A stretch of DNA of 64,000 bases from Lytechinus pictus (Eukaryota): contig NC_087248.1 of the NCBI RefSeq assembly GCF_037042905.1, positions 9,672,001 to 9,736,000 on the forward strand, in the 5' to 3' direction. Shown here piece after piece: positions 1 to 23,601 of the stretch; within the stretch, counting starts at the first letter, position 1, and each line of letters begins with the position of its first letter. A program made the translations under genes and the position numbers. The notes below the pieces were generated by a model, which made no database searches, was not told the DNA's origin, and saw nothing but the letters and a program-made list of their open reading frames with translations.

Positions 1-124
1 TGTTGTCCTTTCGGGTCATCATACCGGCTCCATCCAGGTAGCAATTATTCGCGAAGTCGTTTGGCGTGAGGCGCTGGAATCCGGCTTCGAGTTGGGGCAG
101 CTTAATAGCAAAGGCTACATCGAC
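1..124 (-). CDS. SBP-like gene exon (VDVAF...GAGMMTRKDN), continues beyond window
   Basis: Acceptor ttttcaataccatcaag; open frame to window edge; completes the NGQVDVAF motif. Confidence 0.82.
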
Positions 125-3100
125 CTTGATGGTATTGAAAAGCGAAAATGAAAAGTTGTTAAGATCATTTGTGGTGTGTGAGTGTGTGCCCCGGCGTGTG
201 TGTGTATGTTCTAGTCAAGGTATCGGTTGTATTAGAGTGATTCACTCTGATTCTTTTATAAGCGGCAATCAAAACTATCGGGGAAATGTGACTGCAGCAT
301 TGGGGAGTACTGTTTGTACTAATAATTTGTTGTCCTTACCTGGCCATTCGTTAATGCTTGAATCAGTTCGAGTCCAGTAGAAAAATGATGAATGCGATCA
401 GATGGGACACTAGCACCCTATGATACGAGAAAAAAAGAAAGAAGGTAACAGTTACCATCCAAACAACCAAACGTAACTTAAAGTGTAAAATATTTGATAT
501 TGTCAACTGAATTTATCAGGCTTAAATGAAAGAAAAATCCAATGAGAGGATCGATCTGGGTGGAAAGAGTAAAATGAGGGGTTCAATATACAAATAGTTT
601 CATCAAAACCAGTTATAAAATAAGAGAGGATCCTTAACTTGGCAAACCTGCTTAAAAACGGCTGATTATGTGAAAGACTCTCCTTTTGTTTTGTACACAA
701 ATCAGGGGTGGCGGAAGGGGGAGGGCAGGGGCCACTCGCCCCTCCCAAAAAAAATCCCCATAGGAAAATGCTCTTCTTTCAAAATGGAAAGTGTCTTCTT
801 TAAAAAAGAATTGTACCCCTTTTAAAAATGAATTGCCCTTTTTAAGTTAAACATAATACATTTTAGGTTAGAAAATCGCAAATACTTTTGCCTTGCGCTT
901 CGCGCTCGCATCAATTATTGTTTAGTAAGGTACTCGTTGACTTCCTGGTTACGAAAAATGCTTAGAATATCTAGTTTTCAGTTTGAAATATCACAAACTT
1001 TGAGCCCGCGCTTGCACCTGCATTATTCGATTGGTGAGATGTGTATCCTTCGCATGAGTCACTAAAATAATGCAGTCCTTACCAAGTTCCTTTTCTGGTC
1101 AGTATATGCAGATATGAAATCATATCTAGGGTTCATAATCAATCTAACCATGAAAAAAAATAGGGATCCCCGTTCTTTCTGATGAGCTACAGTGAATTTT
1201 ATGTAAGCATATTTTTGCCATTTATGACCTATTGTGAGAGATTGCACGCGCGCGTGTTGCAAACTGTATGGACGCGCATTCTCTTATTGTCGATTGTAAA
1301 AGGTTGAACCAGGTATCAAATTGCTCAAAATTTAATGGGCATTGATATACTGACATAACAAATACGACTTTATGCTGCATTATGATGTTACGCGAAAACT
1401 TAATAATAATAATAATGATAATAAAGAAAATTCTGACGAAATTAAGGATTGAAGAAAATCCATCATAGATAAAGACCGACTGAAGATACAGTAAAATTCA
1501 CTTTCAATTATTAAGAAAAAAAGAAATTTCACTGATTTTTTAAATTCATAAAATTCTAATAATTTTTCTAAATACCTTTGATGAATTTTCTTCAAACCTT
1601 CACCGATATTTTTTCTTTATTCTGCTATTTTTACAATTAACTTTTTGTCAGGGTAAACTTCCCCTTTTAGATGTCGACTGTGCATCCAATACGCTATAAC
1701 CTCAATGCACGCGCGTCAATACAGTGCAATTACTCTCGTATTAATACAATACATCACCATGTATATACAAGGAAATCAAAAGCAGATACCTCTTCTCCCA
1801 CGGAACTCTCGGACGATAATAGACCTTTACGAGTACCTTTACGAGTACCTTTTTACGAATACCTACCATTCTAAGGATCCGCATTGGACCATATTGCCAA
1901 CTAAGTAGCTTTGACGAATTTGATTACAATGGTATGCTTTACTATTCTTGAATAAGTTTTAATTTTTTTTTACTTTTAATTCATATGGACTCTATTACAC
2001 ATTTGATAAAAATGCTTCATGAGGGTAATTATTTGTCCAACTAACATTGGGCATTTCTTTTGGCATTTTTATTTATCCAGTGTGATGAAAATTTTGCCCA
2101 TTCTAAAGTAATTGCTGCGTATTTTTTAACCTTGCTTGACAATTTGCTTCCCGCATTGGGTAAAATACTGCCCCAACTTGGTTGGACACCTATAATTAAT
2201 CTCGTGCTGGTTAAATTTTACTCAATATTTTTTTTTTACAGTGATGGGTGCGAACTGAAGTCCGGGGTATGTTTTTCATTAAATTGTCCTCTTTTCAAGA
2301 GATGACATTGGTACTGCCAATCGTTCAGACATACATGTTTTATCACAACATGGCAAATTTACTATGAAGATCCGAATTTACGTCGATTCAATCATTATTC
2401 AATTATCACTATCATCAATCTAAAATAATAATGTGAAAAGTGATCCCTTTTCATTCAGTTCTGTTTATTTAATCAATATCAAATAAATTTTACTGCAGAT
2501 TTGAAATAAAAATGGTAAACTTATTAAGGACAAACCTATCAACTTTACAAGGCTCACTCATCACATCAGGATTTCGTACATTAGTCTCAAATTTAGTTTT
2601 AGGGTCTTTAAGGTCACATTCTTAAGACCCTTTTAATTTACGTTATACAGTAATTTCAATGTCATATACTTCTTTACTCGCTTCGCTTGCACTTATATCA
2701 AGGGGAATCCAACCTTGGTAGAGAAGAAACCAACAAAATGTTGAAAGTTCAAACGAAATTGGACAAGAAATAAGAATAATAGTCGACTGGATGTACATGT
2801 AAGATATTAGATTACCATGTAAACTTCAAAATGGCAATTTGGTGGTAAATTTTAACAAGAGGTAGGAATAACGTTCCCATAGCCTGTGTACTTCAGGGAC
2901 TTTTCGTTTTCTCATAAGCAAACATCCCGATGGGGGTCTTGATCAAACAGTATCACAGACATCATTTTATCTAAATCATCATGGAAGATAGATGTTTTAT
3001 GGCGTAAACCTTTTGAAAAAAAATATTGTCATTATTTTCTTTAGCAATTTTTTGTATTGGAACAAAAGAAATTAAGAGTAGTCCTTATCCCATTTCACCA

Positions 3101-6100
3101 TGACATCACCAATGTGGCCAATTTGAAGTCTCCAGATATATAGGGACTTAAAATTTGTACAACTTTTATAAATTCACACTTTCACTTACCGCTTTGTCTT
3201 ATTGTTCTTAATCTTCTAAATACATCTTTCCATTTCCCTTTAATATCCGAGCTACTCAGTGGTCATCATACTCAAAATTTAAATAAGAATTTTTTTTATT
3301 AATTAGTAGGCCTAATCTATGTAATATTCATTATCATTATTGTTGATTATACTTGCTTATAGCGCTCATTACTTACTTTTTAGGAAGTTTCTAAGGGCTC
3401 TAAAATAAATAATGCAGCAGAATCACAAAGGCCTTTGCAAAGCAGAGCGTTTGAAAATATTAATTCATGTCACCAACGTCCCAATGTATCTCACCTGACA
3501 TTGAGTAAAGCAAATTGGATATATCTTTTGCTGAAGGAACTTTATGTGGTGTGTACTTTTGAAGCGTTATTTTACCCTGAGGTTAAGTTTATTTTGATGA
3601 ATGTAAAAAAAAAGATGTGGAAAAATATTAGAGAAAGTTCGATGAAAATTCGTCGAAGAATGAAATAATTACGACTTTTTAGGTTTTTTAATTTGTGACG
3701 TCATATGCGAGCAGCTCCTCCGTTGTCATGTAATAAACTTCCTTAAATTCGTTTTTTTTTGTTTAAAGAACATGATGAATGTGAATATTCTGATCATCAC
3801 TTGACCAAAATTATCCATTGTGAAAATAACGAATTTTTCTCGCTCGGACTCGCTCCTCGCATACAAATAATCTATACTCATTTTTCAGAACTGATGTCGC
3901 AGTCCCGAAACCACTTTCAATTTTTCGGAACAGGCGAAATTTCTCCCCCCCCCCCCCCCCCCCATTCGCATTACCATCCGATTGCATCAATCCACCCCAA
4001 TGCAATATCTTTGTTAACAAGAAGTTTGAAAATTCATTGGTATATCGACCAATTACTGATTTTCTACTAAAATTTCATATTAGGTTTTTTCTATTTTCTA
4101 CTCGAAGTGTGTCGACATTTTAAAGGTACAAACTGGATTCTTCCTCCTCTGGTGGTTGCTTCACGGTGAGTATACTTCTTTTTTTAATCTGCCATCCTCA
4201 TAATCATAATCACAAGGAAGACGGTTGTATTATTGTATGTGGATTTTGAAAGATACTTTTTTATATATTTCTTTTACATATTAATATTTTTCATGACAAA
4301 CTGATTTTTGGATGAATATATCTTCACGAAAAAAGTAGAAATTTGTGAAATGAAAAAAAAAAAAAAACAATAGGTGGGGTTTAAGAAGGGATTTCATACA
4401 TCAGTATAGATACTATCCCAAAGCCTGGGGGCTATAACTGAGGATTCTGTCACCGTAGTTTTTAGTTCGGAGTCCCGGTGGCAGTTGGAGATGGGCAATA
4501 GTGTAATAATAATACCAACACATTTTATAATCCTCTGAATGCTATGAATTATAACCTGTCTACACACGAAATTTGTATCTACTGTCGCAATATCATATAG
4601 GCTTTCTGGCCTAATAAATGTATTTATTAGAATATCTTCGATAATTATGATTTCCATGGCAGCAGTGAAACCATTTAACTAATTCACGCTTGGATGATGC
4701 TATGCTTTTATCAAATACAGTTAAAGGGGAAGTTCACCCTGAAAAAAAGCTTATCATATATAAAAGTAGTAGAAAAAAATAATAACAAATATTGACGATG
4801 GTTTGAGAAAAATCCATCAAAGAATAAAAAAATATCAAAATTTCAATTATTTGATTAGTGCCGTCATATGCGAGTAGGTTTCTTACACATCGTATGGTGA
4901 AAAATCAATGAAATGTCATTTTCTCCGAAAGTTGAAAATGATTTATACGCTACCTTCAGTATATCAATAGACAAATCATTTCACACCTGTCCCTAAAAAG
5001 AAAACAAACGCTGCTCAAAATGTTGAATTCTTTGATCTAAATATATATAAAAAAAAAATTGAGCTCGCGCTTCGCACTCGCATGGTATTTGATATTCTGG
5101 CCACACGAAATACCTTTTCTTGTTTCTAAGATGAGAATTTAGTTAAAAGGACCCTAACATTTAAACAAGTGGAACGCCTCTGGCAGTCTCGCCTGCATTA
5201 CGCGATTTAATATAAAATAATCATTCACAAAAATACCATTCATATAATGACATAATATCACGTTCATTGACCATAAATGGCATTTGAACGGTGACTTAAG
5301 ACTTGTCAACTACACCCATGTCCACATTTCATTCACTCTATCCATAAACTTTCAAAGTTATGATGGCAATTCAACACTTACCCCAACATGGCCTAAGTTT
5401 GACCTGAACTGACCTTTGACCTCGGTTTTGTGACCTGAAACTCACAGGGGATGTTCAGTGATACTTGATTAATCTTATATCCCAAGTTTTATGAACTAGA
5501 TCCATAAACTTTCAGAGTTAGGATGGTAATTCAACAAATACCCCCAACACGGCCAAAGTTCATTGGCCTTAAATGACCTTTGACCATGGTTATGTGACCT
5601 GAAACTCGTACAGGATGTTTAGTGATACTTGATTACTCTTATGTCCAATTATGAACTAGATCCATCAATTTTCAAAGTTATGATGGTAATTTAACAAATA
5701 CCCCCAACACGGCCCTAGTTCATTGACCTAAAATGACCATTGACCATGGTCCTGAAACTCGCACAGGATATTCAGTGATACTCGATTAACCTAATGTCCA
5801 AAATTCATGAACTAGATCCATAAATTTTCAAAGTTATGATAGTAATTCAACAAATACCCCCAACTTGGCCAAAGTTCATTGACCCTAAATGACCTTTGAC
5901 CTTGGTCATGTGAACTGAAACCCAGACAGGATGTTCACTAATACATTAACCTTATGTCCAAGTTTCATGAACTAGTTCCTTAATTTTTCAAAGTTATGAT
6001 AGTAATTCAACAAATACCCCCAACTTGGCCAAAGTTCATCGACCCTAAGTGACCTTTGACCTTGATCATGTGACCTGAAACTCAAGCAGGATCTTTACTA

Positions 6101-9100
6101 ATACCTGCTCAACCTTATGTCGAAGTTTCATGAACTAGGTCCATATACTTTTTAAGTTATGATGTCATTTCAAAAACTTAACCTTCGGTTAAGATTTTGA
6201 AAATAATTCTCCCAATATGGTCTACGTTCATTAACCCTAAATTACATTTGACCTTGGTCATGTGACCTGAAACTCAGGCAGGATGGTCAGTAATACTTGA
6301 TTAACTTTATGGCTAAATTTCATGAACTAGGTTCATATACTTTTTAAGTTATGATGTCATTTCAAATACTTAACCTTAGGTTAAGATTTGATGTTGACGC
6401 CGCCGCCGCCGTCGCCGTCGGAAAAGCAGCGCCTATAGTCTCGCTCTGCTATGCAGGCGAGACAAAAACCAAGCGGAACGCCTCTGGTAGTCTCGCCTGC
6501 ATTATGCAATTCGATATAGCAGCAGTGCTGCAATTGAAAAGAGATTATGATAATAAAATATGTCCATTGACCCAAAATGACCTTTGGTCATGATCATGTG
6601 ACCTAAGACATGCGCAAACAATTATTCATACTTGATTACCCTAATATCGATGTTTCATGAGCTAGATCCCTAAACTGTCTAAGTTATGATGCCGATTCAA
6701 CACATCCTCCCAACACGGCCTGGGTTCATTGACCTCTAAATGACCTTTGATTTTGGCCATGTTCCTGAAACGCGCACAGGGTATTCAGGGATACATTGCT
6801 GCTCTTATATCCAAGTTAAATGAACTAGATCCATAAACTTTTAAAGTTATGATGACGTTTCCACAAATACCCCAAACATTACCAAAGGTTGTTGACCTTA
6901 AATGACCTTTGGCTTTAATCATGTGACCTGAAACTAGCAAAGGATGTTGAAGGATAGTTGAAGCTCATATGTCCAAGTTTGATGAACTAGACCCATAAAA
7001 TTTCAAAGTTATGATAATTCCTCAAATACCCTCAACATGGCCAAAGTTCGTTGACCATAAGTGACCTTTGACCTTGGTCATGTGACCTGAAACTCGCGCA
7101 TGATATTCAGGGATACATGGTTGCTCTTATGTCCGAGTTTCATGCACTAGATTCATAAACTTTTAAAGTTATGACAATTCCTCAAATAACCCCAACATGG
7201 CCAAAGTTTGTTTACCCTAAGTGACCTTTGACCTTAATCATGTGACCTGAAACTCAGGCAGGATCTTCAGTGATATACTATTACCCTTATGTCTAAGTAT
7301 AATGAACTAGGTTTATATACTTTTGAAGTCATGACAGCATTTCAAAAACTTAACCTTGGTTAAGCTGGATCTGCCCCTAAAGAAAATGTGACTGAGGAGA
7401 ATCGGTAACTCTACCATGACTGATGGTCGTCGGATGTCGGTAATCGGTACCGACATTTGTCGGTATTCAAGGCCTTTACACCCCCCCCCCCTGGAAAAGG
7501 CCTAGCGACGCCCCTGTATGAGATTAGATTACAGAAAATGTAGACATGACTATATCAGTTTAATATGGTTTATTTTACTTTCATGTACAGTACAGGTCAA
7601 AAGTTTGGGGCCACCCTCAAATTTAAAAGATTATCATACATAACACTGCATTCTGCATATAAGCAAATTAATAGGCTATGATAGTTCCATTATATTACAC
7701 AAGCATGTTTCCAACTGATTTCGACTGCACTTATGTGAATCCCAGTTGGTTTTCATATTCAAATTTTATGCAAACCTTTAAAATTGACAGGTATGCATAC
7801 AATTTGAATATATTTAAAACAAAGGTTGTTTTTGATAACCTGAAAGTTTGTCCGAGGCTGGTGGCCCCAAACTCTTGGTCTGTATGCCTACTGTAGAGTT
7901 TGTTTGAATTGAAACAGTATTCGTGACGATGTATTTAGTCAACTCCATTGGCACCCGGTCCAATACCCATATTCAATTCTCTATTTTTTCGCCTGGTATG
8001 ATCAACATAAAAGTTAAATCCTGATTCTCCAATGTCATATACAATTATGATGTCAATTGTATACAATAATGCAGTATATTTTTATGAATCTATGTCGGTC
8101 AATGTAAACACCCTTTGAGTTTATTAAATTTGTTACATCTTGTATTAAATGTCATTGTGTGATGAACTGAATGAATACATTGAGTACCCAATACTAATAT
8201 GGTCCACGGACAATTGAACAATATCGGCTACTAATCATTTCTGTTAAAGGCCATTCTTGGTCACGTGTGCGACCGAAACTATGACAAATCTTGACTTTAA
8301 TTAGTTGCAAATCAAAAATATTAAGGATTTAGTAATTCAACAGTTATAAAACATTATCATGTTTAGTCAGCTATCATTTGGAAATATTTTTTGCTGTCTC
8401 TAATTTGCAGGTTCAAAGTCAGAGGTAAAAAGAAATGGATAACGTGTTTGACTTCACACAGAAGCATGACTTTGAAACTTTAATTTCATTTTGAAATTCA
8501 TGTGAATTTCAAAACTGAATTTAACTTTCAAAGACATCCTAATTAGTTATACATCTCTAACATTTTTAGATTTATAACTAATTAAAGTAATGATTTATCA
8601 TAATTTCTATCAAACACGTGACCAAGAATGGCGCTAAAAACCAGTAAAGGTCCGTGGTATTTTGGTCTAAATGTCATTCAGTCTAATCAGAGAACAATCA
8701 TTGCTGTTTTACAGAATCCCATGGTTAACTGTAGTTTATATACTGTATATTAATCAAAATACAAATTTATGCATTGTGCACCTTGTTTATTCTAAGTTAT
8801 GACATTGCAAGGAATGTTTGTTACATTTATTTTGAATTATTTCTTGTGGATATGAATAAAAATGAATCATGATCATGAATCTGTTTGTAACAGGTACTGA
8901 CGGAGTGGGATCATGTCCCTCCGTTCAACCCGATGCCCCCTGTCCTTATGGTATCTCTGAACAAACAGGAGAAACTCTGAAACTGGTTCCCAAGTATCTA
9001 CCACGTGATCATCTTGAATATGACGTCAGAACTCCAAAAGAACTGAGAGACAAAGTCAACCTGTACTGCACGCAGCCAGGTAATCGACAACTCAACGGTG

Positions 9101-12100
9101 TAACTCATCAATCTTTTTAATTAAAGAAGGGGGTGATTCGCCCACATTCAGACATCTTCATTATCGTATATATCGTATATCATCGTATATATTTCTATAT
9201 AATATATCCCTCTTTAACTTGTAGACCTAGTCCTTGCTGAGGTTTTACTAATCTAGATCAATTCTAACGCTGCCGAACCTAGTTCAACGTTCATGACGTT
9301 TGGGAACATATCGAGCATGAGCATTCGCAGTTCTCCCCATGAAAGTATATCGAAAAATATACGGAGATAGAAGAAAACTATATGGAGCTATTTGCAGCGA
9401 TTACAGTTTGTCACATGATCACGAATAGACAAATCGTCACTTTTCTTGAATACTCATGAAAATTCATAAGACGGATATATATATATATATATGTGTGTGT
9501 GGGGGGGTGTGCGTGTGTGTGTGTGAGGGTGCGTGTGTGTGCATTTTAGGAGGGGTGGGGATCTTAACCAAGATCACAATAGCAGAATCTGTTGACAATG
9601 GACCCTGCCAATGATGATAATAAAAAGAATAATAATGACAATAATAAGAATAATGATACTAAAATGATAATAATAGTAATGATAAGGATCATCTGAAAAG
9701 GAATTATGGAAGTTGTCATCTTCATTATCATTATAAGATTGCTATTATCATCATCGCCGATTCATTATTATTTCTCTTGTTATCAATAATTTGTCTTCCT
9801 AATACTACTACTGTCATGACTGTGGGCATATTTTATCAGATATGGGAACAACAATCCGCTTGGTTCACACTTGGAGAGGTAAGCCCACATTTAAATGAAC
9901 CAGACTGCCCACAATCCCTCGACAATTGTCATGATAATAATAAATTTATGTCATTATCTTTCAGCTTGCCACTCGCATACATGTCTCAATGGAGGTACCT
10001 GTGTGGAAGAGCTTGATGGATATAGCTGCGTGTGTGTGGCAGCCTACGAAGGAGTACACTGCGGGAGATGTATGTTCCCAATTTCCAAATCAATTCTCTG
10101 GCACTATCTAGTTAATATAAATAAAATAATGTTAATTTATTTCTTTATTTACTTATTTCATCAGTATATCTGAGTGGTCTCATCGCATTTGATTCAGACC
10201 CGCAGTACAATCTAATAGTGGGGCATCTTCCCAAGTGTGATTTTTTTATTCAAACGAATTAGGGAATAATGGGACCTCACACGCCGTAGAAATGAAAATC
10301 GAACGGGGTCCGTATGTGTGCCTCCAAACTTAGCGTGGCGGTACAAATTGCTCGGTGCCTGGTGCATTCGCAAAATGAAAAAAAAAAGAGTCATCTGAAA
10401 GAATATAATTAAATCTTAAAAAGAAATCTATTCCTAGCTGCATAAAGGGCTGTTTGACTCTGGTAGTATAAAGCAGAGAAAATTTTCCCGCTGGTGCTAC
10501 TAACCGGGCTATGTGTGGCATGATAGAACACTGTGCTACAAAGGTTTCCCCACAATCAAAATATGTTAATGCATGCCGATTGTGTTTCCATGTACTGACA
10601 CCTCTAACACCCCTATTCGTCACCCCTTTTCCCCATTCACTTTTGTACACGTAAAGAAGCAGGGGAGGGCGGGGTAAGTTGAACAGAGGGGCAAGATGAT
10701 CCACCAGCCCCAGGCCAACAATGAATGAGTCTGACATTGTGGTGCTGTCATGTATTGATGACCCATAGCATAACCCCTTACCCCATCACATTGCTTTCAA
10801 CTTTGAAACAAAAAGTACTTTTTAGAGGGAAAATACAAATTTCAGTCAAGAAAGTAAAAAAGAGTGTGAAATAGATAATACACACAAACACACGTCTTTA
10901 AATTAAATAAAGACATAAGAACAACATTGTTAGTCCAGGTATGGATCTTCATTCTTGTCATAGTCTGTTTGATGGATGCATAAGAAATGTAAGGATACGA
11001 AATTATCGCATTAGGTTCGGACTGGGGTAAGTTGAGACCGACAACATGGGGCAAGTTGAGCCATGGTAATTCTTATGGTAATGTATTTATTTAAAAAAAA
11101 ACCTATAAAATCCATTGATATGCAGGCTGAAAGGAGCAAATTTACATGACTGTCCTTTTCCTTTTAGAGGATGTTAGTATTTATAGAGAATGAGCAAGTG
11201 AAAAGACTTTAAATGAAAAAATTAGCATGCTGGTTCTTCCCCCATACATTTTGTACAAGTTTTTGTGGCTCAACTTACCCCAGAAGGTGGCTCAAACTTA
11301 TTCCGCAGATGGGGCAAGTTGAGCCATTTGACATCTCTTTTTGCAAAGGTGACAATGACTTTCAGTGTGGGGGTAGGAAGTTATATATAGGTGAAAAATA
11401 TTTCAAAAGAATTTAATTTTAAGGCAAGGTACTTATTTCTACAAGATTATAAATCATATAAATTCTAACATGCAAAAACTGTCACAACTTACCCCGCCTT
11501 CCCCTATTCATTAGTGCATCATGTATTTTCATAAAAAAGAGGCGTGTTATTGAACATGTTCCATTGGCCATCAACGATGTTCGTTTCGCTGATTGGTCCC
11601 TTTTCATCATGTTCATTACGCGAAGAAAACGATAAACTTTTTTCTAAAAATAATAATGCTCGTTAAACTTTTAGCGAGAATTTTAGAAATGAGTAATTAA
11701 TGATCTCTGAGGTATGGTTTTCGATCCTGGGATGTTTAAATGTATGAATCTGACAAATATTTGTTCTCAGTCATAACCAAGTTTGTGGCAGTAACAGGGT
11801 CGAACTTATTCGTTTTCAAGTCATCGTGGTTCGTCGTCGCTTGCTATATGGGCATAAACCGCCCGTTAACCGTAACCAGCCAGGCGGCTGGGCGGCCAGC
11901 CTTGCCCTTGGCATGCGCATCCCGCGCGCGCGGCCAGGCAAGGTCGGTAGATCGCTGGGCAAGACCCTGTTTAGTTTCCCATTCTTGCCCTCACACGAAG
12001 AAGCGTTGATGGCTAATAATGGATATTCAATAGCAATAAATATCATAAAAGCCGAAGTTTGCCACGCCTCTTTTTGGTGCAAAATACATGAGACACTAAT

Positions 12101-15100
12101 GAATATTCACTACTTTTTCAAAAGTGAATGGGGAAAAGGTGTGTCAGACATCGGGGTGTTAGTAAATGGAAACACCCATACCGATTCAAGCACAAGGCTC
12201 ACAAAAGATTAGAAACCCAAATAGCTACTTATTATGTATCCGGCCCTTACCTATAGGTTTGTAATGCATACCTTTTTAAAATGGCATCCGAATAAATTAA
12301 CATCTGATTCCGTTACTTAAAAGGGCCTATATATGTGTTTTATCGTCTGGAATCTAACCTGATATTTAATTCGTGGGTTTCATTATTTGTTACAATGGTT
12401 GATGCATTCTTTTTTGTTTGAATCCTTCCATGGTTTAAAAGTATACAAGACCGAAAATCTTGGAATCATCATTGAAAATCATCATTGAAATATCAATACC
12501 TGTTTTTCTGTTTATTTTTTTAATATCAAATCAGATAATTTAGGTATATGTCCAGATGGATGGGTTTACGGGATAACCAAATGCTTTCTAATCGCTCAAG
12601 ACATATCGAACTGGCAGAGTGCTAGACTCTTCTGTTCAAATTTACCCGAGGTATCACTCGATAACGGGGAAAGGATTAAACCATCCCTGTTGTTCATAGA
12701 GAGCGATGAAGAGTTTGATCTTCTGGAACGCCATGTATCCGGCGGTTCACCTTGGATGAATTGTAACGACATTGACGTCGAGGGGACATGGGTGTGCATC
12801 AGGGACGGTCTGGGTACAACCAGTTCATATAGAAGTAAGTACTTTGGACATGTTAGAAGGGTTTTTCACTTGACCTACAATCGGTTGGTTAAATTCCGAG
12901 ATAGTCCAATGGTCTCCTATCAACTGCCGTTTGGTATGCAGTGCACATCACTTCTTCTAATACACAATTTGTAAATCTCATAATCTTATATAGTCGAATG
13001 CCCATGCAGTTCTTTTGTATGTGTGATTGATATTTTACAGACGTATAACAGATACGATTTATCTGGTGCCGGCCATTAACGTCACCATCCGAAAGACGTG
13101 ACAAAGGCTCGGACCTCGAACCTCCGCATCAATTTGTAACTTCCCCACGTAGCTTGGATTACAGGCGCACGTCACAACTCCCAGTTTAGTTTCCACGTCG
13201 TTTACTTACATTATTTTTTCTTGTTTTTACTTTGTCAAAATTAAAATTTGGTTTGTACAAAGTTCATCTAACCATGTATACCAAGTGGTGTAAATCAAGT
13301 AGATATTATCCTTTCTCGTATTCATTTTTACAATATTTTTTCTTCAGTATCAGCTAGCAGCCCAATTAGATGGTCTCCAGCCAGCGCCCACAGAATGCGC
13401 TAGCGGACTTCTAAAACAAGACGGGCGGCATTCTGAACCCCTGCTACATAACTGCACTGGCTCCCTATTAGACACCGGATTACTTTTAAGCTACTTCTTT
13501 CGGTATACAAATCTCTTAATAACCCAGCCTTCACTGTTGCATCCTCGATGGACTAGAACAAACTCCATCTCACATTAAAACAATCCCCAACAACTGATTC
13601 ATTCAAGAAGTCCAATAAAACTTTTTTTTCGTTTCAGGCAGCTGAGTTCGTAAATGATTCTGGTTTAACTCGGAAAGTGGACGACGCTTCACAATGTCAT
13701 AACGCCCGGAGAGGGAGGTGGGGGGGGGGGGGTTGTCACTAAACTTAATTCGCATTCAACAGTACGTATATCGTGGCTGAGATTCAGGAAGAAAAACAAA
13801 CCAACATCAAAGTCAGAAAAAAGGGGCAGTTTCTGGAGTTAGAAATTTAAAAATGAGAAAAGGGGCATATTTCTAGGCTTATCATCACCCTTATCCTTGG
13901 TGGGGGTAAATTATCATTCCTTATTCTAACTGTCGTGCGATCCATTGCGAACGCGACGATTGGCCTTTCGTAACTATAATCGCAATTTTTTTTGGACCAT
14001 TTAAAAATTTTCTACGATCAATACGATTGCCACAACCGATCTGATATGATCTGATACGATCTGATATGACCTGATACGATCCACGATTAAAAGCACAGTT
14101 TTAATCATGTTAATCGTGAAAGTGGGAGCTAGGTATTCTCGTTTCAACTGTCCTGCGATCCAACACGAACGCCACCTGATCATGAGAATTTTTGAACCAT
14201 TCAGTTTTTTTTCAGCGATCATTACGATTGCCACAACTAAAAAGATCTACGATGTAATAGGATCTGATACGATCACTACGATCTACAAAATCTAAGATCA
14301 CCGTTTTAATCGTGGGGCAAATCGTGAAAATGGGAAACAGGTATAATACCTACAGGCGAAAAATACCTGAGTACCAATATTTTTGTCAATGCTCCCACCC
14401 CTCCCACGTCCGTCTTTGTACCCCCTTTTTTTTTGGGGGGGTGGAGCCTGATAACATAGTGAGTCTAGATTTGTATTATTTCATGAATATCCGTGACGAT
14501 TCGGGGAACGGTTAGGGTCTGGTATTCCTAAGCAGATCCTGCTACGTTCTATAACCTATCTTCATTGAAACCCATGTCAGGGACGTAAAGAGACGAAGAT
14601 TTTGAGGGGACAGAATATGGCATATTGGGCAAAACTTCTAAACAGTAGCAAGGGACCGAAAATATTGTTTTTAATTGAAAATCTATAATTTTGGGACAGA
14701 GTTTGACATAATATTTAGGAAATATCATATTTCTTCTTTCCTTTTCTTTCTTCCCCTTCCCCTTCTTTATTTCTTGGTCGTGGACGTTTTTTTTTTTTTT
14801 GGGGGGGGGGGATGGCAAGCGCCCCAACCCCCTTCCCCATCGATACGCCAGTGACGCATGGGATGACTGGGATCACGACTGTCTAAGCCGACACACACCA
14901 GCCGCAAGGGAATTATATGCACTTTATTTCTCATTATTTTCCAAGTAGCTTATTTGGAATTTGGTGTCCCCCAGCAATGAATTTCGGGATCCGCCGCTGG
15001 AGTTTATCATATCACCAGCTTTACGTCATCCAAAAATTTGTCACAAAATTTTTGCAATTATTTCTATAGTTTGTAATTACAAATGGGTACCAACTTCATA

Positions 15101-18100
15101 TTGCCTGTGTAAAAGGTAGTGTTCTCCATGGAGAGTCAGGCAATCACTGTAAAATAATGATGACTTCGTGAAAGCAGGCAAACTTGGTGTCGTATAGGGA
15201 TCACGCGCGTTAAAATAGTAACTAGTGTGTTAAAAATTGTACTGTTAAAAAGAAATGAAATTGAAGGGTTAAATGTTTACTACCAGTGCATAGGATATAT
15301 CAGACATTCCATATCTGACCAGAATAGGGTAACTTTGCCAGCTCATTTTGAAAAAAAATCGGCATTTATGAAGATCAAATTCATACCCAAAACAACTGTA
15401 AAGTACCCATAATTCTTCCGCCAGTCAAAGAATAGTTCCAAAGTCATCAATATTTCGTCCTAATTTGGGCAAAGGAAGTTCAGTAGTTGCCCTCCCTATT
15501 ATCAGTGTTAGATGATCAATCATATACTAGTACATACACTTTTGTCAATTAGCAATATCAAATTTTTAAAAATTTGAATGGGTTGTGTCGAATTAATATC
15601 TTTTGCCTTCTGTTGTAATTAGGCCTGTGGCACCTTCACACATTGACACATTTAAACGTTACATTAAAGCAGATACGAACCAATAGCACCATCTCGTTTC
15701 CTCAACTATTCATACCTGGCCAGTTTCCTGATCCATAATGCTAGTGTATTCTAGTAATATAGACACACTTGAATAACATGCTAATTAAGTACTCAATACA
15801 TTAAATTCCGCAATAATTGTGTTACCAAGTAGCAAAACAATTACTTGTCCTCTCAAAACAGTTAAGTTTCTCTATACATATACAATTATAGGTCAATTTA
15901 CTATCTGTAGTATTAGTAGATATCTGAAAACGTATATTTTAAGACTATGTTTTTATAACACACAGTCAAAGAGAGACCACACACAGTTCACTCTTCCTTT
16001 AAGACACCTTTATTCAATTCTTCCTACTGTTAATTGTTCCTAAATCTATTATCAATATATTTGTACTTTTCTTTCTTTCTTTCACTCCACCTTTATTATT
16101 ATTTACCTGTCGGCGTCATCCAACGCAAGAGGGCGCCGCGCACTTAGCCTCTGTGATACTAGTATTTCATCCCGAGAAAGTTGTTGTTGTTGTTATTTTG
16201 AATAGGCAAACTAGTCAGTTTTGACTATTCTTGCCTTGTAAATTTGCTTTCCTTTTTTTTTCAAAGCAGAATAATTTCTTTGTTGAATCTATATCAGTTA
16301 GGAAATAAAGGAGAGAGGAAAGAAAAGTTCTTAGGAAATCGTGCAAGACCACCTCTCCTGCCCTGTATAGCACGTTATCCTGACAAGCCCGCTCGATGTG
16401 CATTTCGAGGGCGTCTCAGGAGTAAGAAAGAATCGTTTATGTTCTTTTCTCTATTTTTTCAGATTGGAACAAAAATCAGCCTGACAACCCCCGCTCAGAT
16501 TGTGGATTTCTGTACATAGTAACCGGCGGAATGGACGATGGTGGATGCTCTTCTCCTAAGCCTACAGTTTGTCAAATCAACATTCCTTCATAAAATAAAT
16601 CGACATTCTCTGATAGATCACGGGATATAATTTAGGACATACCGATTTGATCTTATTTAACATGTTATATCTGGACGTAATAAAGCGAAAGAGAGACTAA
16701 AAAGATTCGAGGGCCTTAAAGGGGTACTCCAGGCTGAAATAATATGATTTATGCATATCAAGAAAAATCAGACAAACAAAGCACTGAAAATTTGATCAAA
16801 ATCGGACAAGAAATAACAAAGCTACATTTGTATTTTATGATATGAAATTAGGTTTATTCAATTTTTTCTACCAAGAACTAAAAAGATGGATTTACAACTG
16901 ATTTGGGGCATTGTGTATATATTGCTGCAATTTATTTCATTATAAGGGAGACATATCATTCACACAAGTGTGAACAAATGGAGCAATTGTGATTTCGTGT
17001 TGTAACGTAAGAAAAAGGAAAGTGGGGATGTGACATCAGCCCACCTAATGAATATTCCTGACGACGTGCATATAACCGTTTTCACAAAATATTGATAAAC
17101 TTTAGAATTTAATAACTTTGTTATTTATCATTCGATTTTTATGAAAATGTTCAGCATTTTGCTTTGTGAATTTTACTCTATTTATTTAGATCTAAATATT
17201 TTCAGCCCGGAGTACCCCTTTAACAGGTTCCTTGTAAGACCAAGAACGGTTCTAGATAATCGTTAAAAATTTCTTCTGCTTGTTTGAAGTTCCAAATACA
17301 GGACAAAGGTTCCAATTTGTTTAGAATAGAGGAAATTCCTTCCTTCCTATTTCTCCTATCTTCCATTACCAATTATACGGCACAATCCTTTTTATTGCAA
17401 CACAGGGATATTTTGATAGTGGGAAACATAAAATTAATTTGCAGCCTGCAAAATTGATGAAAATAATTATTGTTATGCAGCATAATGATTTGATTTTGAT
17501 TTGATTTATTAATTACACGGTAAATAGCCCTCGATCAGCCAATGGCTGGTTTTCAAATGAGGCCGTGCAATATACAACCAATAGAAAGAATAACAAATCA
17601 TAATAAAGTAAATTAAGTAAAACAAAAACCTATATACAAAACAAAAGAGGGAGGATGAAACCAAACAGAAACAAATTCAAAACAGAAAACAAAAACACAA
17701 TTGTAACAAAATAAAAAAGTTGGGTAAATAGGGATAACCAAGATTTTAGGACTTTTTCAATTTCAGATTCAAATGAATTAAGATTTGGTAAAGTGCGAAT
17801 ACGTTCTGCAAATGAATTAAAATCAAGTATGGCAAGATATAGGCTGCTATTTCGTGCAAAGTCTCTATTGGGTGTTTTCAAGTTTATTATATTGTTTGAG
17901 TTACGGAGTGTGTGGGTAGAATGTTGCTTAAGACTAATCATATTACATATAAAATGCGGTAAGAGCTTATTGAGTAACATAAATATTAAAACAAGTGCTT
18001 GTTTTTTCATCTAAGGACAATGATATTTTGTGAATTTCGTGACACACTGATGGGAGTAACGTAATACATAGAAAATCTAAATAATACTAAGCCCTAACTC

Positions 18101-21100
18101 TCAGCATTTGGTTATTTTTTGCCAGGCCAACCAAGATTTCGAATTTGCTTTTTACTCGTAATTGTATGAGATTTTTTTTTCTTGTGTGTGCATTAATCCA
18201 TCACGCCTAGAACACACCACTGACAGCGCTATGCGCATCCACTTTGAATATATTAAATTATTCTCTTAGAAAATTGATATGACCTTGCATTAAAAACATT
18301 ACCATAACTGTATTTCAGGGCGGAAGAGGTGTCAGTCTCCAATTATTTTTTTTATTTGTGAAAATGGAGGAGAGAATGAAGAAGATCATAAAAAGAGGGG
18401 TTATGTGTTCTATCTGTGTAAAACCATATTTTGAACGATAAAAATGACGTCATCTAAATATTATATTGCACTCCCAAGTCCGAACCGCTATACACCACGA
18501 TGTCAGAATAAATTCATCAATTTTCAATTGTCTTTTATCATTCGGCACAAGAAGAAAGTTAGCTGGAAAAAAATGAAACATTCTTTTTCTCTTAATGAGT
18601 GTTAAACATATCTAAACAATATGATTTGGATCAAAATCTTCCTACGTTTATATTTATTTTCTTATACATTCTATTCATTTTCTTTTTGTTTTAGATTTCA
18701 TTCATTCTCCGCAAAGCTGATTTGCGAAAATTGATTGAATCGTTTGAATTTGAATAGAAATTAAGAAGTTTGTACTTGATTTTGATTCCTATTGGTTTGA
18801 TTAGGCCTATTTTAATTACGTATTTTTAGTGAAGGCAAACATTGTAAAGCCGAAGAGTCTCTGTAAGTTAGGAGAAATTTAACAAATGTGATCTGGTAAT
18901 ACAGCTAAAGCAGTCTTCTATGTAAGTTGTTATTGTTTGTAAGTATCTAATACTCAGGAATGAATAGTAAAAAAAAATCACGGTCATTAACAAGTCTAAT
19001 GGTTAATTCCGAGTGATAAAAACTCAGACGACCCACAAATATCCCTAGTTACAATTCGTTATTTCGTTATTCTAAAATGTTCAACAGTCCAAAAATTCAT
19101 TATTTCACACGTTAGTCAGTCTAAGGATTATACAGGAGGTTCGTCCGAAATTAAATAAGGTTCAATATTCGGGAAGATTCTGAAGGTTTGACAGCCCCAA
19201 AATGAAGTAATGTTCCTATAGTCTATTTGTTATTGTTTTTTGTTGTTGTACTGAAAACCTTATTACATTTTCGAACTCTTTATCGAAATTTTGGAATAAT
19301 GAACCTTGTTACAATTCAAGAATAAGGAACTGTAGGAGCAGTGTTTACCTTATCTTATACTCGGATTTACGAACCTACGAAATAACAATCCGAAAAAAAT
19401 CAGTAGCGTAATGAGTTAATGGCGTATGGGGTAACAATTTCTTTATAGAAAAATGCATGTACACAAGAGTCAAATTCTGTGATAGATTTGACATAATATT
19501 TGGAAAATAATACCACATTTCACACTTTTCCTTTCCTTTTCTTCATTTTCTGATGTTTTTCTTGGTCGGAAAAATTGGGGCTCCATGGCCCCCAAAGTCC
19601 CCCCCCCCCCCCGAAAAAAACCCTGTACACCCGTGACCTGCTTAATAACAGATTAGTTGATTTATTGGGTTGATTTGATATGATAAAATGATTTCCGTTT
19701 CACATTTGTACATAATATGATGAACATATTACAATTAATTAAAACAAATATTACAAAACACAATATGACAGGTACAGATTAATGATTACGTTTAAGTTTG
19801 CCAGATATATAGTTGCACAACATACAATACCGTGCGAGAAAAAAAAACTTGACACCTCACAAATCCCCAAATATTTCATGAACACATATATATATTATAT
19901 ATGGCCTGAAAGAGTATCTTATCCCGAATAATTTTAGACCATATTTACGTGGTATGTCTTCACGCTTGGATGATCAAGGGGTATTCTTTGCAGTAATGCA
20001 AATTTTTATTTGAGCCAAAGAAAGGCGTGACTGCAATAAATGAATCAAGAGGCCAATTATGTCATAATCACACATGATCATGAGTTATAGTAAACACATT
20101 TGCAAATCCCTTTTCAATGAAATTAGCTTGAGAATTGATACTAAAAACTGTTTATTAAACAATGATAATGTAAATTATTGAGAAGGTGTTTTGAAATGGT
20201 TTTTAATGCAACCCTTGTAGGATTATGACACCATTGACATCTGGATTCATTTATTGCAGTCATGCCTTATATTGGCGCAAATCCAAATTAACATCACTGC
20301 AAAGAATACCTCTTGATCATCCAAGCGTTAACACATACCGCATAAAAAAATTGGAGAACATACTTTTTCAGGCCATATATAATTATGGGTTAAAGACATA
20401 TTTTTCCTTATTTTAATTGGGGATTTGTGAGGTGTCAAGTTTTTTTTACTCACACGGTAGACATGGAAGAGAAATGTATTAAAGTGTAATTACCAAAATG
20501 TTTTCAGCCTCATATCTAGCTAAGCAATGTTCATCCGAGGCCCATCCGTCGATGAAGCCGACGTTGAGTCCAGTTAGATTACGAAAGTTGATGGTCGATG
20601 ATCTCGGAGCGTAGAGGGCTACGTCCTTTCTTTTCACAAAGGCTCGGGTGAAGTCAAAACTTAAACTTCTCGGGTAGGTTTTAACCCAACCTGGAATGAA
20701 AGAGAGTCAGAGTGAGGCTAGAAAAGAAGAAGGCCGGGTTGAAGTATCATTATCATCGTCGTTATCATCGTCATCATCACCCTCGTTATCTTTAATACCA
20801 TTGTCATCATCATTACCACCACCTTCATCACTATCATATCATCATCGTCATCCTCCATCGTCGTCATCATCATCATCATTGTCATCATCATCATCATCCT
20901 CCATCGTCGTCATCATCATCACCATCATCATTTTCCTATTTACCATAATTCTTTATCACCATTTTCATCATTATCGTCATTATCATTATAATCACCACCA
21001 TCATCACACATCAAAATGTTCTTAGCCATCTTGACCGTCGACATCACACCAACTTCCAAATTCATTTTCCCATCCACCTCACCTGTGCACGCATCGTACC

Positions 21101-23601
21101 AACCGGACAGCAATCCCTCTCCTCCCCGTGCCTGCTGGCCTGGTTCCGAATCCCAACACCGTTGGTTGACGTCCTTCATTAGAACGCAAGTCTTATTAGC
21201 GAGCCGACAGACTGAAAAAAATGATCAAAATAAATCCCTTGAAAACATTAATATTGATTACAAAATGCTGAATACATAACAGAACGACAGAGAGGGTGAG
21301 AAAGTAGGTAGGTAGGAGAAAGTGAAAAGGCATATAGGCAGGCTGGATAGGAGGGAATAGGCATTCAAGATCCACTTAAAACAGCCGAAAAAGAGTGACT
21401 ACATAAAATATCTTCAGAATTATTAAGGCGTTTATCCACAAATCATTCATATTCATTAAGGGGGAAATTACCGAATTTACCGGATATACAGACTGCGCAA
21501 ACTCCTGTATTTGTGTTGCGAATGGTACATTATACATTACACACACTTATTATATCCCCTTGGCAGAGAAGGGCTTGAACAACAACTAAAAATCGACAAA
21601 TAAAAATACATTTTACCGTTGCCCCAAGATGAGTGTTGATTAAGCGGAATAAATGCATTATTGGAAATTGCATGTCATCATTAAAATGCAGCGAGTGAGC
21701 TGATGATGTAATCTACCTACTTTTCTTATGTATTCCATATCATAGTATAAAATGAAATTGTAATGATTTCAATTTTCTGCTCCAAGAATGTACAAATATG
21801 ACCGACTACTGATTGAATGTACCTCTGCTGAAACTTGTTATGTGTGATAAGAAACATAAACTAATTAAATAGAATGAAATAAGGTAAAAAGAACGAGAGG
21901 TCATGACATCATTTACTCGCTCATTGCGTATTCATGCCAAAATGTGCGAGAACCATTTCGGATAACAAATAACGAAGTTATTGAATTTTAAAGATTTGCA
22001 TTATTCTGGTGAAACAGTTCTAGGCATGTCTTTATGAATATTAATTAGGTGGGCTGATGATGTCATATCCACAATTGTTCTTTTGTACACTCTAAATTAC
22101 AGGGATTTAAAATAAATCCTGATCGGCTGTGAATAGGGGCCAGTCGATTTTGGATTTAGATTTAAATCTTAAAGATTTAGATTTAAATCTTAAAGATTTA
22201 GATTTAAATCTTAGAGATTTAAATTTTAAGCATTTGTGGATTGAATATAAATCCTTAATATTCAAATCTAAATCCAAAATCGACTGGTCCCTATTCACAG
22301 CCGATCAGGATTTATTTTAAATCCCTGTAATTTAGAGTGTATTTTATCGTATGACATTAGGTTTATTAAAAAAAAATTCTACCAAGAACTAAAGTAATTG
22401 GATCGACAACTGATTAGTTATTTATTGCCGCAACTTATTTCATCATAATGGAGACACATCATTTACACATGTATGAAAAAATGAAACATTTATGATTTCA
22501 TGTAATAACAAAAGAAAAAGAAAAAGTGGGATGTGACATCATCATCAGCCCACCTAATGAACATTCATGATAATGTGCATATAACTGTTTTCACAAAATA
22601 TTGTTAAACTTTAAGATTCAATAACTTCGTTCCGATATTGATGAAATTTTCAGCATTTTGCTTTATGAACTTTACTCTGTTTATTTAGATATATTTTCAG
22701 CCCGGACCATCCCTTTAAAACCCAAAGACTATCTATTATTTATTCAATGATTATGAAATGTTCACCATTTTGCTCCTGTACTTTAATCAAATTATATCAT
22801 TTGGGGAAAGGCGTTCCCCTTCGACAGTTTTGCCACCCAATATAGGCACATGTGCTAGACTTCTCCCGAGACCAGAAGAATTTATTCAAATCCTTAATAG
22901 GTTAGCGTGCTTGCAGTTTCGAAGGTAAGGGGTGGAAGAGGGGGGGGGTCATATGTCATATCCTACCTGCTTCGACCACATCAATGTTGTATCCTTTGAT
23001 CTGATAAGACGCCTCGTCCCTGAGAAGGGGATAGAAACCAATCAACAACAGGTGTAATCAAACTGAAAGGATTAACACTTACTGGTACACCTTTCTGGTG
23101 CTATAACCATGCAGCATCTCCGCGTCTTATGGTAGTGCATTTCTTCTATACTTTCTAACCGTTATCTGTGTTTGAAAACATTTAATTCATCATTCACATG
23201 CCTTTTGGAATTAATAATTTAATAAATCTACTTTCAACTTTAGCTGGTAGGCATATAGGTATCGAAACGACTTACAATCAGGGTGAAACAGCTATACGAG
23301 ACACCATCCGGGAAAAGTGTAATCAGAACATGCACGTTCAGAGGTGATGCACGCCAATGGCCCTGGGAAGCGGGTGTGCTGAGGGTGCTAAAGCACCCCC
23401 AAATTTTAACTTTGGGGGTGCTGCGTATGTTATTTACTATAGGCAGCACCCCTTGATATCTGGTATGCTATATAACATAAATGTAACCAAAATGATCTTC
23501 ATTTTTAGTGAGAACCTGTTTTAGCTTATCTAATTTTTCTCGCACCAAAATCACCTTCATTTTGTAGTTAAATACATTTTTATTTTGTCTTTTATTTATT
23601 A

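What the first reader, a model, noticed from the sequence alone, without database searches (positions are those of the whole stretch)
418..20493. Complete 6-exon EGF/C-type lectin gene nested antisense inside a 20-kb intron of the solute-binding protein gene
Seen: the SBP exon ending EAENIL (20494, phase 0) has its in-phase continuation at 417 (GASVP...ALTNGQ|VDVAF), and I found no suitable exon in between. The whole plus-strand lectin gene (1929-16593) lies in that interval. Other SBP introns are 0.2-1.8 kb, so this one was probably inflated by insertion of an intron-containing gene, i.e. at DNA level rather than by retroposition (inference). Two probably secreted ligand-binding proteins on opposite strands could be mutually exclusive through transcriptional interference, or co-regulated.
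Basis: partly seen in the sequence, partly recalled or inferred. Interest (0 to 1): 0.7.

Follow-up and report, generated by a model that had tools for sequence, protein, structure and literature searches.

The report
Lectin gene nested in sea-urchin intron
In the painted sea urchin, a six-exon EGF/C-type lectin gene lies backwards inside a 20-kb intron of a membrane-anchored solute-binding-protein gene; the arrangement is real and evolutionarily young, but it is an ordinary kind of gene nesting.

Summary
The exon coordinates are right. The window is Lytechinus pictus (C4:9672001-9736000).

**Host gene.** Minus-strand exon E (20690-20494) ends in phase 0. The next exon of the same gene is F (417-340).
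- With an exon 1 outside the window and two 3' exons, these form an intact 8-exon, 314-aa, all GT-AG reading frame.
- It is 97.5% identical to the L. variegatus ortholog, and one SBP_bac_3 domain spans the E|F junction.

**Nested gene.** The annotated 260-aa lectin (EGF + Lectin_C, six coding exons, 7416-16593, plus strand) lies wholly between E and F. Its coding sequence starts at 7416, not 1929.

**RNA evidence.** F-G is spliced and transcribed from the minus strand. F's upstream partner lies outside window 1-6000. Assembled contigs run 604 and 460 nt past F, and 603 nt is the coding length upstream of F. I did not read the E|F junction letters themselves.

**Other species.** The same intron is 0.77 kb in S. 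purpuratus and 2.3 or 6.0 kb in L. variegatus, with no lectin inside. In L. variegatus a lectin sits just downstream, tail to tail. The nesting therefore arose recently, by DNA-level duplication or rearrangement.

**Not the only large intron.** Intron 1 is about 45 kb and holds at least 76 antisense tRNA-Lys genes.

Transcriptional interference between the two genes is untested. Nested genes are a well-known arrangement, so interest is low to moderate.

The parts
20494..20690 (-). SBP exon E (exon 5 of 8), ends in phase 0 with ...EAENIL; GT donor at 20493-20492
   Evidence: 190/197 nt identical to the L. variegatus exon. 72% of its sampled words are held in RNA-like runs.
418..20493 (-). SBP intron 5 (20,076 nt), the host intron
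   Evidence: GT..AG ends. About 100 bp after E and about 460 bp before F are homologous to the L. variegatus intron. The orthologous intron is 0.77 kb in S. purpuratus and 2.3 or 6.0 kb in L. variegatus.
340..417 (-). SBP exon F (exon 6), GASVPSDRIHHFSTGLELIQALTNGQ
   Evidence: RNA depth is about 33, from the minus strand.
1..124 (-). SBP exon G (exon 7), continues 93 nt beyond the window start; exon H lies 1.25 kb further
   Evidence: The F-G joint 122->338 (cut +2) is seen in 20 + 18 stranded reads and in 2 contigs.
21083..21211 (-). SBP exon D (exon 4)
22967..23019 (-). SBP exon C (exon 3)
24624..24675 (-). SBP exon B (exon 2); exon 1 is outside the window at 69838-70009
7416..7462 (+). Lectin coding exon 1 (MTDGRRMSVIGTDIC..; no evident signal peptide)
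   Evidence: The window encodes P0057 exactly with GT-AG introns.
8411..8424 (+). Lectin coding exon 2, a 14-nt micro-exon
8894..9079 (+). Lectin coding exon 3 (Cys-containing N-terminal module shared with paralogs P0058-P0060)
9965..10069 (+). Lectin coding exon 4, EGF domain
   Evidence: Pfam EGF 27.9 bits, above the 21.5 cut-off.
12535..12834 (+). Lectin coding exon 5, N-terminal two thirds of the C-type lectin domain
   Evidence: Pfam Lectin_C 38.4 bits, above the 22.6 cut-off.
16463..16593 (+). Lectin coding exon 6, end of the C-type lectin domain (WNKNQPDN...), with stop codon
28711..63957 (+). Array of 74 tRNA-Lys (UUU/CUU) genes inside SBP intron 1, antisense to the SBP gene
   Evidence: Two more copies lie in L028. 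There are 9 and 16 copies in the L. variegatus orthologous introns and none in S. purpuratus.
1867..2066 (-). Two alternative first exons (1867-1884 MRILRM, 2046-2066 MPKEMPN) used by the database's 119/120-aa F-G-H-only models
   Evidence: Depth is zero over 1801-2000. Over 2001-2200 there are only a few reads, on both strands and from diverged copies.

Best explanation
This is a genuine and recently formed nested gene pair in Lytechinus pictus.

**Host.** The host is an 8-exon gene on the minus strand. It encodes a 314-aa protein with an N-terminal membrane anchor and one bacterial-type solute-binding (SBP_bac_3) ectodomain. Its fifth intron (window 20493-418, 20.1 kb) is spliced out to join exon E to exon F.

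**Nested gene.** Inside that intron, on the opposite strand and overlapping no host exon, lies an independent six-coding-exon gene (7416-16593). It encodes a 260-aa EGF + C-type-lectin protein.

**Origin (inferred).** The lectin arrived at the DNA level, by segmental duplication or rearrangement within a local SBP-lectin cluster. The ancestral state, still seen in L. variegatus, is a short lectin-free intron with a lectin gene tail to tail just downstream of the SBP gene. The exact order of rearrangements is unresolved.

**Shown:** exon structure, intact reading frames, domain content, F-G splicing and strand, comparative intron sizes, local duplications.
**Inferred:** the E|F junction in L. 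pictus RNA (indirect evidence only), the route of origin, and any regulatory interaction between the two genes.
For: **One gene across the intron**
- The eight exons give a 945-nt ORF with GT-AG at every intron. It is 306/314 identical to L. variegatus P0001 with no gap.
- Orthologs and paralogs (P0001, P0039, P0044, P0004, P0006) carry the E and F segments side by side.
- Pfam SBP_bac_3 covers residues 72-291 of the ortholog, across the 201|202 junction. F-H alone scores below the cut-off.
- dN/dS against L. variegatus is 0.12 for exons 1-E and 0.08 for exons F-H.
- In the seven other SBP paralogs paired, E and G lie about 1-8 kb apart, in the same order.

**RNA**
- Stranded reads cover F and G at a depth of about 33, from the minus strand only.
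- The G-F joint has 20 + 18 reads.
- There is no coverage just beyond 418 and none over 1801-2000.
- Contig X1 (1339 nt) has 604 nt, and contig X15 has 460 nt, beyond F that lie nowhere in window 1-6000. The coding length upstream of F is 603 nt.
- The same runs hold 72% of the sampled exon-E words.

**Lectin**
- The window encodes the annotated P0057 exactly, with six GT-AG coding exons and EGF and Lectin_C above the Pfam cut-offs.

**Comparative**
- The E-F intron is 0.77 kb in S. purpuratus and 2.3 or 6.0 kb in L. variegatus, with no lectin exon inside.
- L. variegatus has a lectin last exon 6.8 kb downstream of SBP exon H, on the opposite strand. That region is collinear with the region downstream of the L. 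pictus F-G-H exons.
- A second assembled copy 80 kb away has the same E-lectin-FGH order.
Against: - I did not read the junction letters E|F in L. pictus RNA.
- The public protein set holds no full-length L. pictus SBP protein. It holds only 119- and 120-aa models made of F-G-H with ad hoc first exons.
- F-G-H occurs three times at 100% identity, so reads cannot be assigned to one copy.
- Lectin transcription was not examined here.
- The two 42-kb copies are 99.2% identical and could be an uncollapsed haplotype rather than a true duplication.
Confidence: 0.85

Rival explanations
1. The gene is split in L. pictus. The rearrangement that brought the lectin in separated exons 1-E from F-H. F-G-H is then transcribed from an internal promoter as a short RNA, as in the 119/120-aa database models, and exons 1-E are a truncated remnant. 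On this reading the lectin lies between two fragments, not inside an intron.
For: - Only 119- and 120-aa F-G-H proteins of L. pictus are in the protein collection. No full-length model was found.
- The F-G-H block is triplicated, and one copy (C4:9565177) has no exon E upstream of it within the unit.
Against: - The proposed alternative first exon at 1867-1884 has zero RNA depth. The one at 2046-2066 has only a few reads, on both strands and with mismatches.
- Contigs continue 460-604 nt beyond F into sequence not present in window 418-6000. 604 nt fits the 603-nt upstream coding sequence.
- Exon-E words are present in the same RNA-like runs.
- Both halves have an intact frame and dN/dS of about 0.1.
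- F-H alone is about a third of a two-lobed binding domain and scores below the Pfam cut-off.
Confidence: 0.08
2. Assembly artefact. The 20-kb spacing, or the placement of the lectin between E and F, comes from mis-joined or uncollapsed haplotype sequence in a repeat-rich, duplicated region.
For: - The region holds a 42-kb duplicate at 99.2% identity, an 11-kb block present three times at about 99%, and many dispersed repeats.
Against: - Two separately assembled copies show the same order and similar spacing: 20.1 kb and about 20.8 kb.
- There are no N runs in the window or in the 184 kb examined.
- Both ends of the intron are homologous to the L. variegatus intron ends.
Confidence: 0.04

Closest known systems
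Nested (intronic) protein-coding genes of animals, e.g. Drosophila 2mit in a timeless2 intron and vertebrate LRRTM genes in alpha-catenin introns
   Same: A complete protein-coding gene with its own exons sits inside one intron of a larger host gene, on the opposite strand. About 63% of human nested genes are on the opposite strand (PMC3192792). Intronic genes are about 6% of D. melanogaster genes (PMC3786989). Gain and loss of nesting between lineages is documented (PMC3933685, PMC2151771).
   Different: - The nesting here is very young: it is absent from the congener L. variegatus and from S. purpuratus.
- The nested gene has multiple exons (41% of human nested genes are single-exon, PMC3192792).
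- It is a paralog of the host's own downstream neighbour.
- The same host gene also carries at least 76 antisense tRNA-Lys genes in another intron.
Sea-urchin SBP_bac_3 proteins annotated as 'Solute-binding protein family 3/N-terminal domain-containing protein' (S. purpuratus LOC100892647; L. variegatus 314-aa orthologs)
   Same: Same 8-exon structure, same length (313-314 aa), 85-97.5% identity, and the same N-terminal hydrophobic anchor and single SBP_bac_3 domain.
   Different: The L. pictus gene spans about 71 kb, against 8.6 kb in S. purpuratus and 24 or 33 kb in L. variegatus. The difference comes from the lectin-bearing intron 5 and the expanded tRNA-Lys array in intron 1.
Sea-urchin EGF + C-type lectin proteins ('aggrecan core protein-like', 'fibropellin-1-like' of L. 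pictus)
   Same: The nested gene is the annotated 260-aa 'aggrecan core protein-like' protein. It has the N-terminal Cys module, one EGF domain and one C-type lectin domain, as do paralogs P0058-P0060.
   Different: - The model has no evident signal peptide.
- This copy has QPD at the sugar-specificity position, where its three neighbouring copies have EPD.

Membership tests
Nested (intronic) gene pair | The exons on either side of the nested gene belong to one host gene (frame, homology, one domain) | tested here: met
   - Intact 314-aa ORF with GT-AG at every intron; 306/314 identical and gap-free against the L. variegatus ortholog.
- The SBP_bac_3 domain spans the junction.
- No other F-like exon lies in the interval.
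Nested (intronic) gene pair | The flanking exons are joined in mature RNA of this species | tested here: inconclusive
   - F-G is spliced on the minus strand, and F's upstream partner lies outside window 1-6000.
- Contigs extend 604 and 460 nt beyond F, against 603 nt of upstream coding sequence.
- Exon-E words are in the same runs.
- The junction letters themselves were not seen.
Nested (intronic) gene pair | The nested gene lies wholly inside one intron and shares no exon with the host | tested here: met
   Lectin coding exons span 7416-16593 (+). The host intron spans 418-20493 (-).
Nested (intronic) gene pair | The nested gene is an independent, intact, transcribed gene | tested here: inconclusive
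   - The ORF is intact, with six GT-AG exons and Pfam EGF and Lectin_C above their cut-offs.
- A 14-nt micro-exon in the public model hints at RNA support.
- No reads were laid on lectin exons here.
SBP_bac_3 (PF00497) solute-binding proteins | Pfam model matched above the gathering score | tested here: met
   Ortholog P0001, 97.5% identical to the L. pictus model, scores 32.3 bits against a cut-off of 26.4 over residues 72-291. Single exons alone give no hit.
C-type lectin domain (PF00059) with EGF (PF00008) | Pfam models matched above the gathering score | tested here: met
   P0057 scores Lectin_C 38.4 bits (cut-off 22.6) and EGF 27.9 bits (cut-off 21.5).
C-type lectin domain (PF00059) with EGF (PF00008) | Ca2+/sugar-binding motifs (EPN or QPD, plus WND) | tested here: inconclusive
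   QPD is present (NQPDN). The WND position reads MDD. Binding activity cannot be tested with these tools.
Retroposed (processed) gene insertion | Intronless copy with a polyA tract and target-site duplications | tested here: not met
   The lectin keeps five introns, and intron-bearing paralogs lie next to it.

The most novel reading that the evidence does not exclude
The locus may be a freshly made natural test case for how nested genes arise and what they cost.
- Since L. pictus split from L. variegatus, a neighbouring lectin paralog has been captured into a host intron by local duplication.
- The same host gene must be transcribed by Pol II through at least 76 antisense Pol III tRNA-Lys genes and through one antisense Pol II gene, and it still yields full-length mRNA.
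- If host and lectin, or host and tRNA array, show reciprocal expression in L. pictus but not in L. variegatus, the two species would allow a clean comparative test of transcriptional interference.
Probability: 0.25. Interest if true: 0.5.

Novelty: new member of a known kind. Interest (0 to 1): 0.3.

Why it matters
- **Annotation.** The public protein set appears to hold only 119/120-aa fragments of this L. pictus gene. The evidence here supports a 314-aa, 8-exon, roughly 71-kb gene with a lectin gene and a tRNA-Lys array inside its introns.
- **Evolution.** It is a dated example of a nested gene arising by duplication or rearrangement of a neighbouring gene rather than by retroposition. It is present in L. 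pictus and absent in L. variegatus and S. purpuratus.
- **Beyond that**, nested antisense genes are common in animals. No special mechanism is implied unless the two genes are shown to interfere with each other.

Tried and rejected
- **Pfam on single SBP exons** gave nothing because they are too short. The full-length ortholog was used instead.
- **Earlier findings of the scan** gave nothing usable.
- **The look-up of encoding contigs for the lectin P0057**: no record.
- **Last protein search with P0057**: it returned paralogs only and no L. variegatus ortholog. I therefore could not fetch the far side of the L. variegatus lectin, and the order of rearrangements stays unresolved.
- **Repeat after exon E as a recombination breakpoint.** I considered that the sequence just after E (window 20130-20483), which matches the L. 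variegatus lectin 3' flank, marks the breakpoint. I rejected it as evidence of orthology because it is a dispersed MITE-like repeat with more than 1000 candidate copies.
- **A signal-peptide exon for the lectin between 418 and 8893**: no convincing candidate.
- **High RNA depth at 5000-6000**: explained by a dispersed repeat with more than 5000 candidate copies, not by a local gene.
- **Rfam on window 1-28000**: no family matched.
- **Exact look-up of the spliced 314-aa L. pictus protein.** I did not hand it in, because it has no reference and would have had to be typed.
Full report
**Where we are.** The window is G000:C4:9672001-9736000 of an 812-Mb, 368-contig genome. The contig length, 32,991,779, is the one recorded for Lytechinus pictus proteins. 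The organism is therefore the painted sea urchin.

**The observation.**
- On the minus strand, exon E runs 20690-20494 and ends ...CLARYEAENIL in phase 0, followed by GTAATT.
- Exon F starts at 417 after a pyrimidine tract and AG, reads GASVPSDRIHHFSTGLELIQALTNGQ, and ends at 340 before GTAAGG.
- Exon G starts at 124 (VDVAFAIKLPQLEAGF...) and runs off the window.
- tblastn of the orthologous protein against the window finds exons at 24676-24623, 23018-22968, 21215-21075, 20691-20494, 417-337 and 127-2. It finds nothing F- or G-like between 418 and 20493.

**Is it one gene?**
- A profile-free search with exon E found a 314-aa protein, P0001, 97% identical over the exon. It reads ...CLARYEADNIL|GASVPSDRIHHF... 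without interruption. It comes from the L. variegatus assembly GCA_018143015.1.
- A second L. variegatus copy (P0039), the S. purpuratus ortholog (P0044, 313 aa, 85%) and more distant urchin paralogs (P0004, P0006) have the same continuity.
- I located exon 1 with a whole-genome search. It occurs once, at C4:9741836-9742009, which is window 69838-70009 and so outside the window. I located exon H 1.25 kb below the window start.
- The eight L. pictus exons give a 945-nt ORF. Every intron is GT-AG. The product is 314 aa and 306/314 identical to P0001 with no gap.
- Pfam places one SBP_bac_3 domain on residues 72-291 of the ortholog (32.3 bits, cut-off 26.4), so it spans the 201|202 E|F junction. 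The F-H part alone reaches only 18.5 bits.
- Against L. variegatus, dS is 0.11. dN/dS is 0.12 for exons 1-E and 0.08 for F-H.
- The N-terminus (…VVLCGILLALTASLVALIIGSVSLA…) looks like a signal-anchor. I infer a membrane-tethered ectodomain rather than a soluble secreted protein.
- In the seven other SBP paralogs of this genome that could be paired between the two searches, E and G lie about 1-8 kb apart, in the same order.

**RNA.**
- Exon-E words (13 of 18 sampled) are held by eight contig sets of 'organism A'. These behave as RNA: each holds 81-159 Mb of contigs. In the two I laid (X1, X15), coverage within window 1-6000 falls mainly on exons and repeats, with gaps over much of the intron.
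- Exons G and F are covered at a depth of about 33, only by pairs whose first mate is on the + strand. In a standard stranded library this means RNA from the minus strand.
- The G-F intron is removed: the joint 122->338 (cut +2, CT..AC) has 20 and 18 reads and one contig in each set.
- Coverage stops at 418, so there is no read-through into the intron.
- Bin 1801-2000 is empty in all four runs. Bin 2001-2200 has a handful of reads on both strands, all carrying mismatches.
- Contig X1 record 1 (1339 nt) aligns 533-654 to window 1-122 and 655-735 to 338-418. It then has 604 more letters that lie nowhere in window 1-6000. Contig X15 record 8 has 460 such letters.
- The coding length upstream of F in my model is 172+52+53+129+197 = 603 nt.
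- The extra base matched at 418 equals the last base of exon E.
- This is strong indirect support for an exon1-B-C-D-E-F-G-H mRNA.

**The public short models.**
- The only L. pictus members of the ortholog's 90% cluster are a 119-aa protein (MRILRM|GASVPS...) and a 120-aa protein (MPKEMPN|GASVPS...).
- Their first exons map to window 1867-1884 and 2046-2066 on the minus strand.
- One search gives them no support, or almost none.
- A search with the full-length ortholog found no longer L. pictus model.
- The public annotation therefore seems to have split the gene. The nesting is not visible in it.

**The lectin.**
- The open frame around the C-type lectin exon retrieved one protein, P0057, 'aggrecan core protein-like [Lytechinus pictus]', 260 aa.
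- The window encodes it exactly in six coding exons, all GT-AG: 7416-7462, 8411-8424 (a 14-nt micro-exon), 8894-9079, 9965-10069, 12535-12834 and 16463-16593.
- Pfam gives Lectin_C at 38.4 bits and EGF at 27.9 bits, both above their cut-offs.
- 'Six exons' is therefore right, and the gene lies wholly within SBP intron 5.
- The model's N-terminus is not signal-peptide-like, and I found no better upstream exon. The true 5' end is uncertain.
- I have no read data on lectin exons.

**Comparative evidence.**

| Species / locus | E-F intron | Lectin exon inside? |
|---|---|---|
| S. purpuratus (L026) | 0.77 kb | no |
| L. variegatus (L027) | 2.3 kb | no |
| L. variegatus (L025) | 6.0 kb | no |
| L. 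pictus (window) | 20.1 kb | yes |

- Only about 100 bp after E and about 460 bp before F align between L. pictus and L. variegatus.
- In L027 a lectin last exon lies 6.8 kb downstream of SBP exon H, on the opposite strand. The stretch from H to that exon is collinear with the stretch downstream of the L. pictus F-G-H exons, which ends at another lectin copy.
- The ancestral layout is therefore SBP followed tail to tail by a lectin. The lectin inside the intron is an extra paralog.

**The neighbourhood**.
- In descending coordinates, which is the SBP sense, the order is: exon 1; a 45-kb intron; B-E; lectin A; F-G-H; a lectin fragment (last exon only); 39 kb of other sequence; B-E (copy 2, with no exon 1); lectin B; F-G-H; lectin C; F-G-H.
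- A 42-kb segment (C4:9661095-9699585) is 99.2% identical to C4:9580252-9622119.
- An 11-kb block holding lectin exons 1-3 and F-G-H is present three times at about 99% identity.
- The 3' parts of lectins A/B and lectin C are only about 78% identical in non-coding sequence. That is less than the 88% seen between L. pictus and L. variegatus flanks. The two lectin lineages therefore predate the species split, and the region has been reshuffled by duplication and probably gene conversion.
- I could not reconstruct a unique path from 'E-FGH-lectin' to 'E-lectin-FGH-lectin-FGH'.
- The repeat just after exon E that also matches the L. variegatus lectin flank is a MITE-like element with more than 1000 candidate copies. 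It is not a breakpoint marker.
- What is clear is that the lectin arrived as genomic DNA with its introns, from next door, and not by retroposition.

**The premise about intron sizes.** Intron 5 is not the only large intron. Intron 1 is about 45 kb. The window part of it (28711-63957) contains 74 tRNA-Lys genes (UUU and CUU) at roughly 455-490-bp spacing on the plus strand, and two more lie beyond the window. The L. variegatus orthologs have 9 and 16 copies in the same intron. S. purpuratus has none.

**Comparison with what is known.**
- Protein-coding genes nested in introns are common in animals, and most lie on the opposite strand. About 63% of human nested genes are antisense and 41% are single-exon (PMC3192792). 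About 6% of D. melanogaster genes are intronic (PMC3786989). Gain and loss between lineages is documented (PMC3933685, PMC2151771).
- Whether nesting causes interference is debated, and PMC3192792 reviews both views.
- This case adds a young, well-bracketed example in a laboratory sea urchin. It does not add a new kind of arrangement.

**Verdict.**
The exon ends, phases and nesting are right. The lectin start and the 'other introns are small' premise are not.
Nesting and a DNA-level origin hold. The regulatory idea is untested.
- My confidence in a true nested pair is 0.85.
- The main rival is a gene split into two transcription units (0.08). After that comes an assembly artefact (0.04).
- Interest is 0.3.

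Noticed in passing
window 28711-63957 (+), continuing to L028:1965: At least 76 tandem tRNA-Lys genes (anticodons UUU and CUU, about 455-490 bp apart) lie antisense inside SBP intron 1. The orthologous introns of L. variegatus hold 9 and 16 copies, and S. purpuratus holds none. The array has therefore expanded several-fold in L. pictus.
   Followed up: partly
window 12535-12834 and 16463-16593 versus C4:9603680-9603976 and C4:9607721-9607855: Lectin A (window) and lectin B sit in 99.1%-identical duplicated DNA. Their C-type-lectin exon nevertheless differs by 6 nonsynonymous and 0 synonymous changes, and the last exon has been replaced. A has QPD at the sugar-specificity motif, where B, C and the fragment D have EPD. 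This may reflect diversifying selection or gene conversion, but the numbers are small.
   Followed up: partly
C4:9661095-9699585 (window -10905 to 27585) versus C4:9580252-9622119: A 42-kb segmental duplicate at 99.2% identity. The lower copy carries SBP exons B-H but no exon 1, which is unique in the genome. It is either a promoterless partial duplicate or an uncollapsed haplotype.
   Followed up: partly
window 1-460 and C4:9591145-9591604, C4:9565177-9565636: SBP exons F-G with their intron occur three times at 100% identity. They sit inside an 11-kb block, about 99% identical between copies, that also holds lectin exons 1-3. The third copy has no exon E upstream of it.
   Followed up: partly
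window 1867-1884 and 2046-2066 (-): Public 119- and 120-aa L. pictus proteins start in these small exons and continue with F-G-H. RNA depth there is zero or near zero in four runs. These are probably truncated models of the 314-aa gene.
   Followed up: yes
window 5200-6390 and 6652-7336: A dispersed repeat (more than 5000 candidate copies at about 93% identity) with internal 160-bp tandem units. It is heavily represented in RNA, mostly with the first mate on the + strand, and this accounts for the very high depth at 5000-6000 in the reads table.
   Followed up: partly
window 20100-20462: A MITE-like dispersed repeat (more than 1000 candidate copies, often in inverted pairs) begins about 30 bp downstream of the exon E donor. 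Part of it is shared with the L. variegatus intron.
   Followed up: partly
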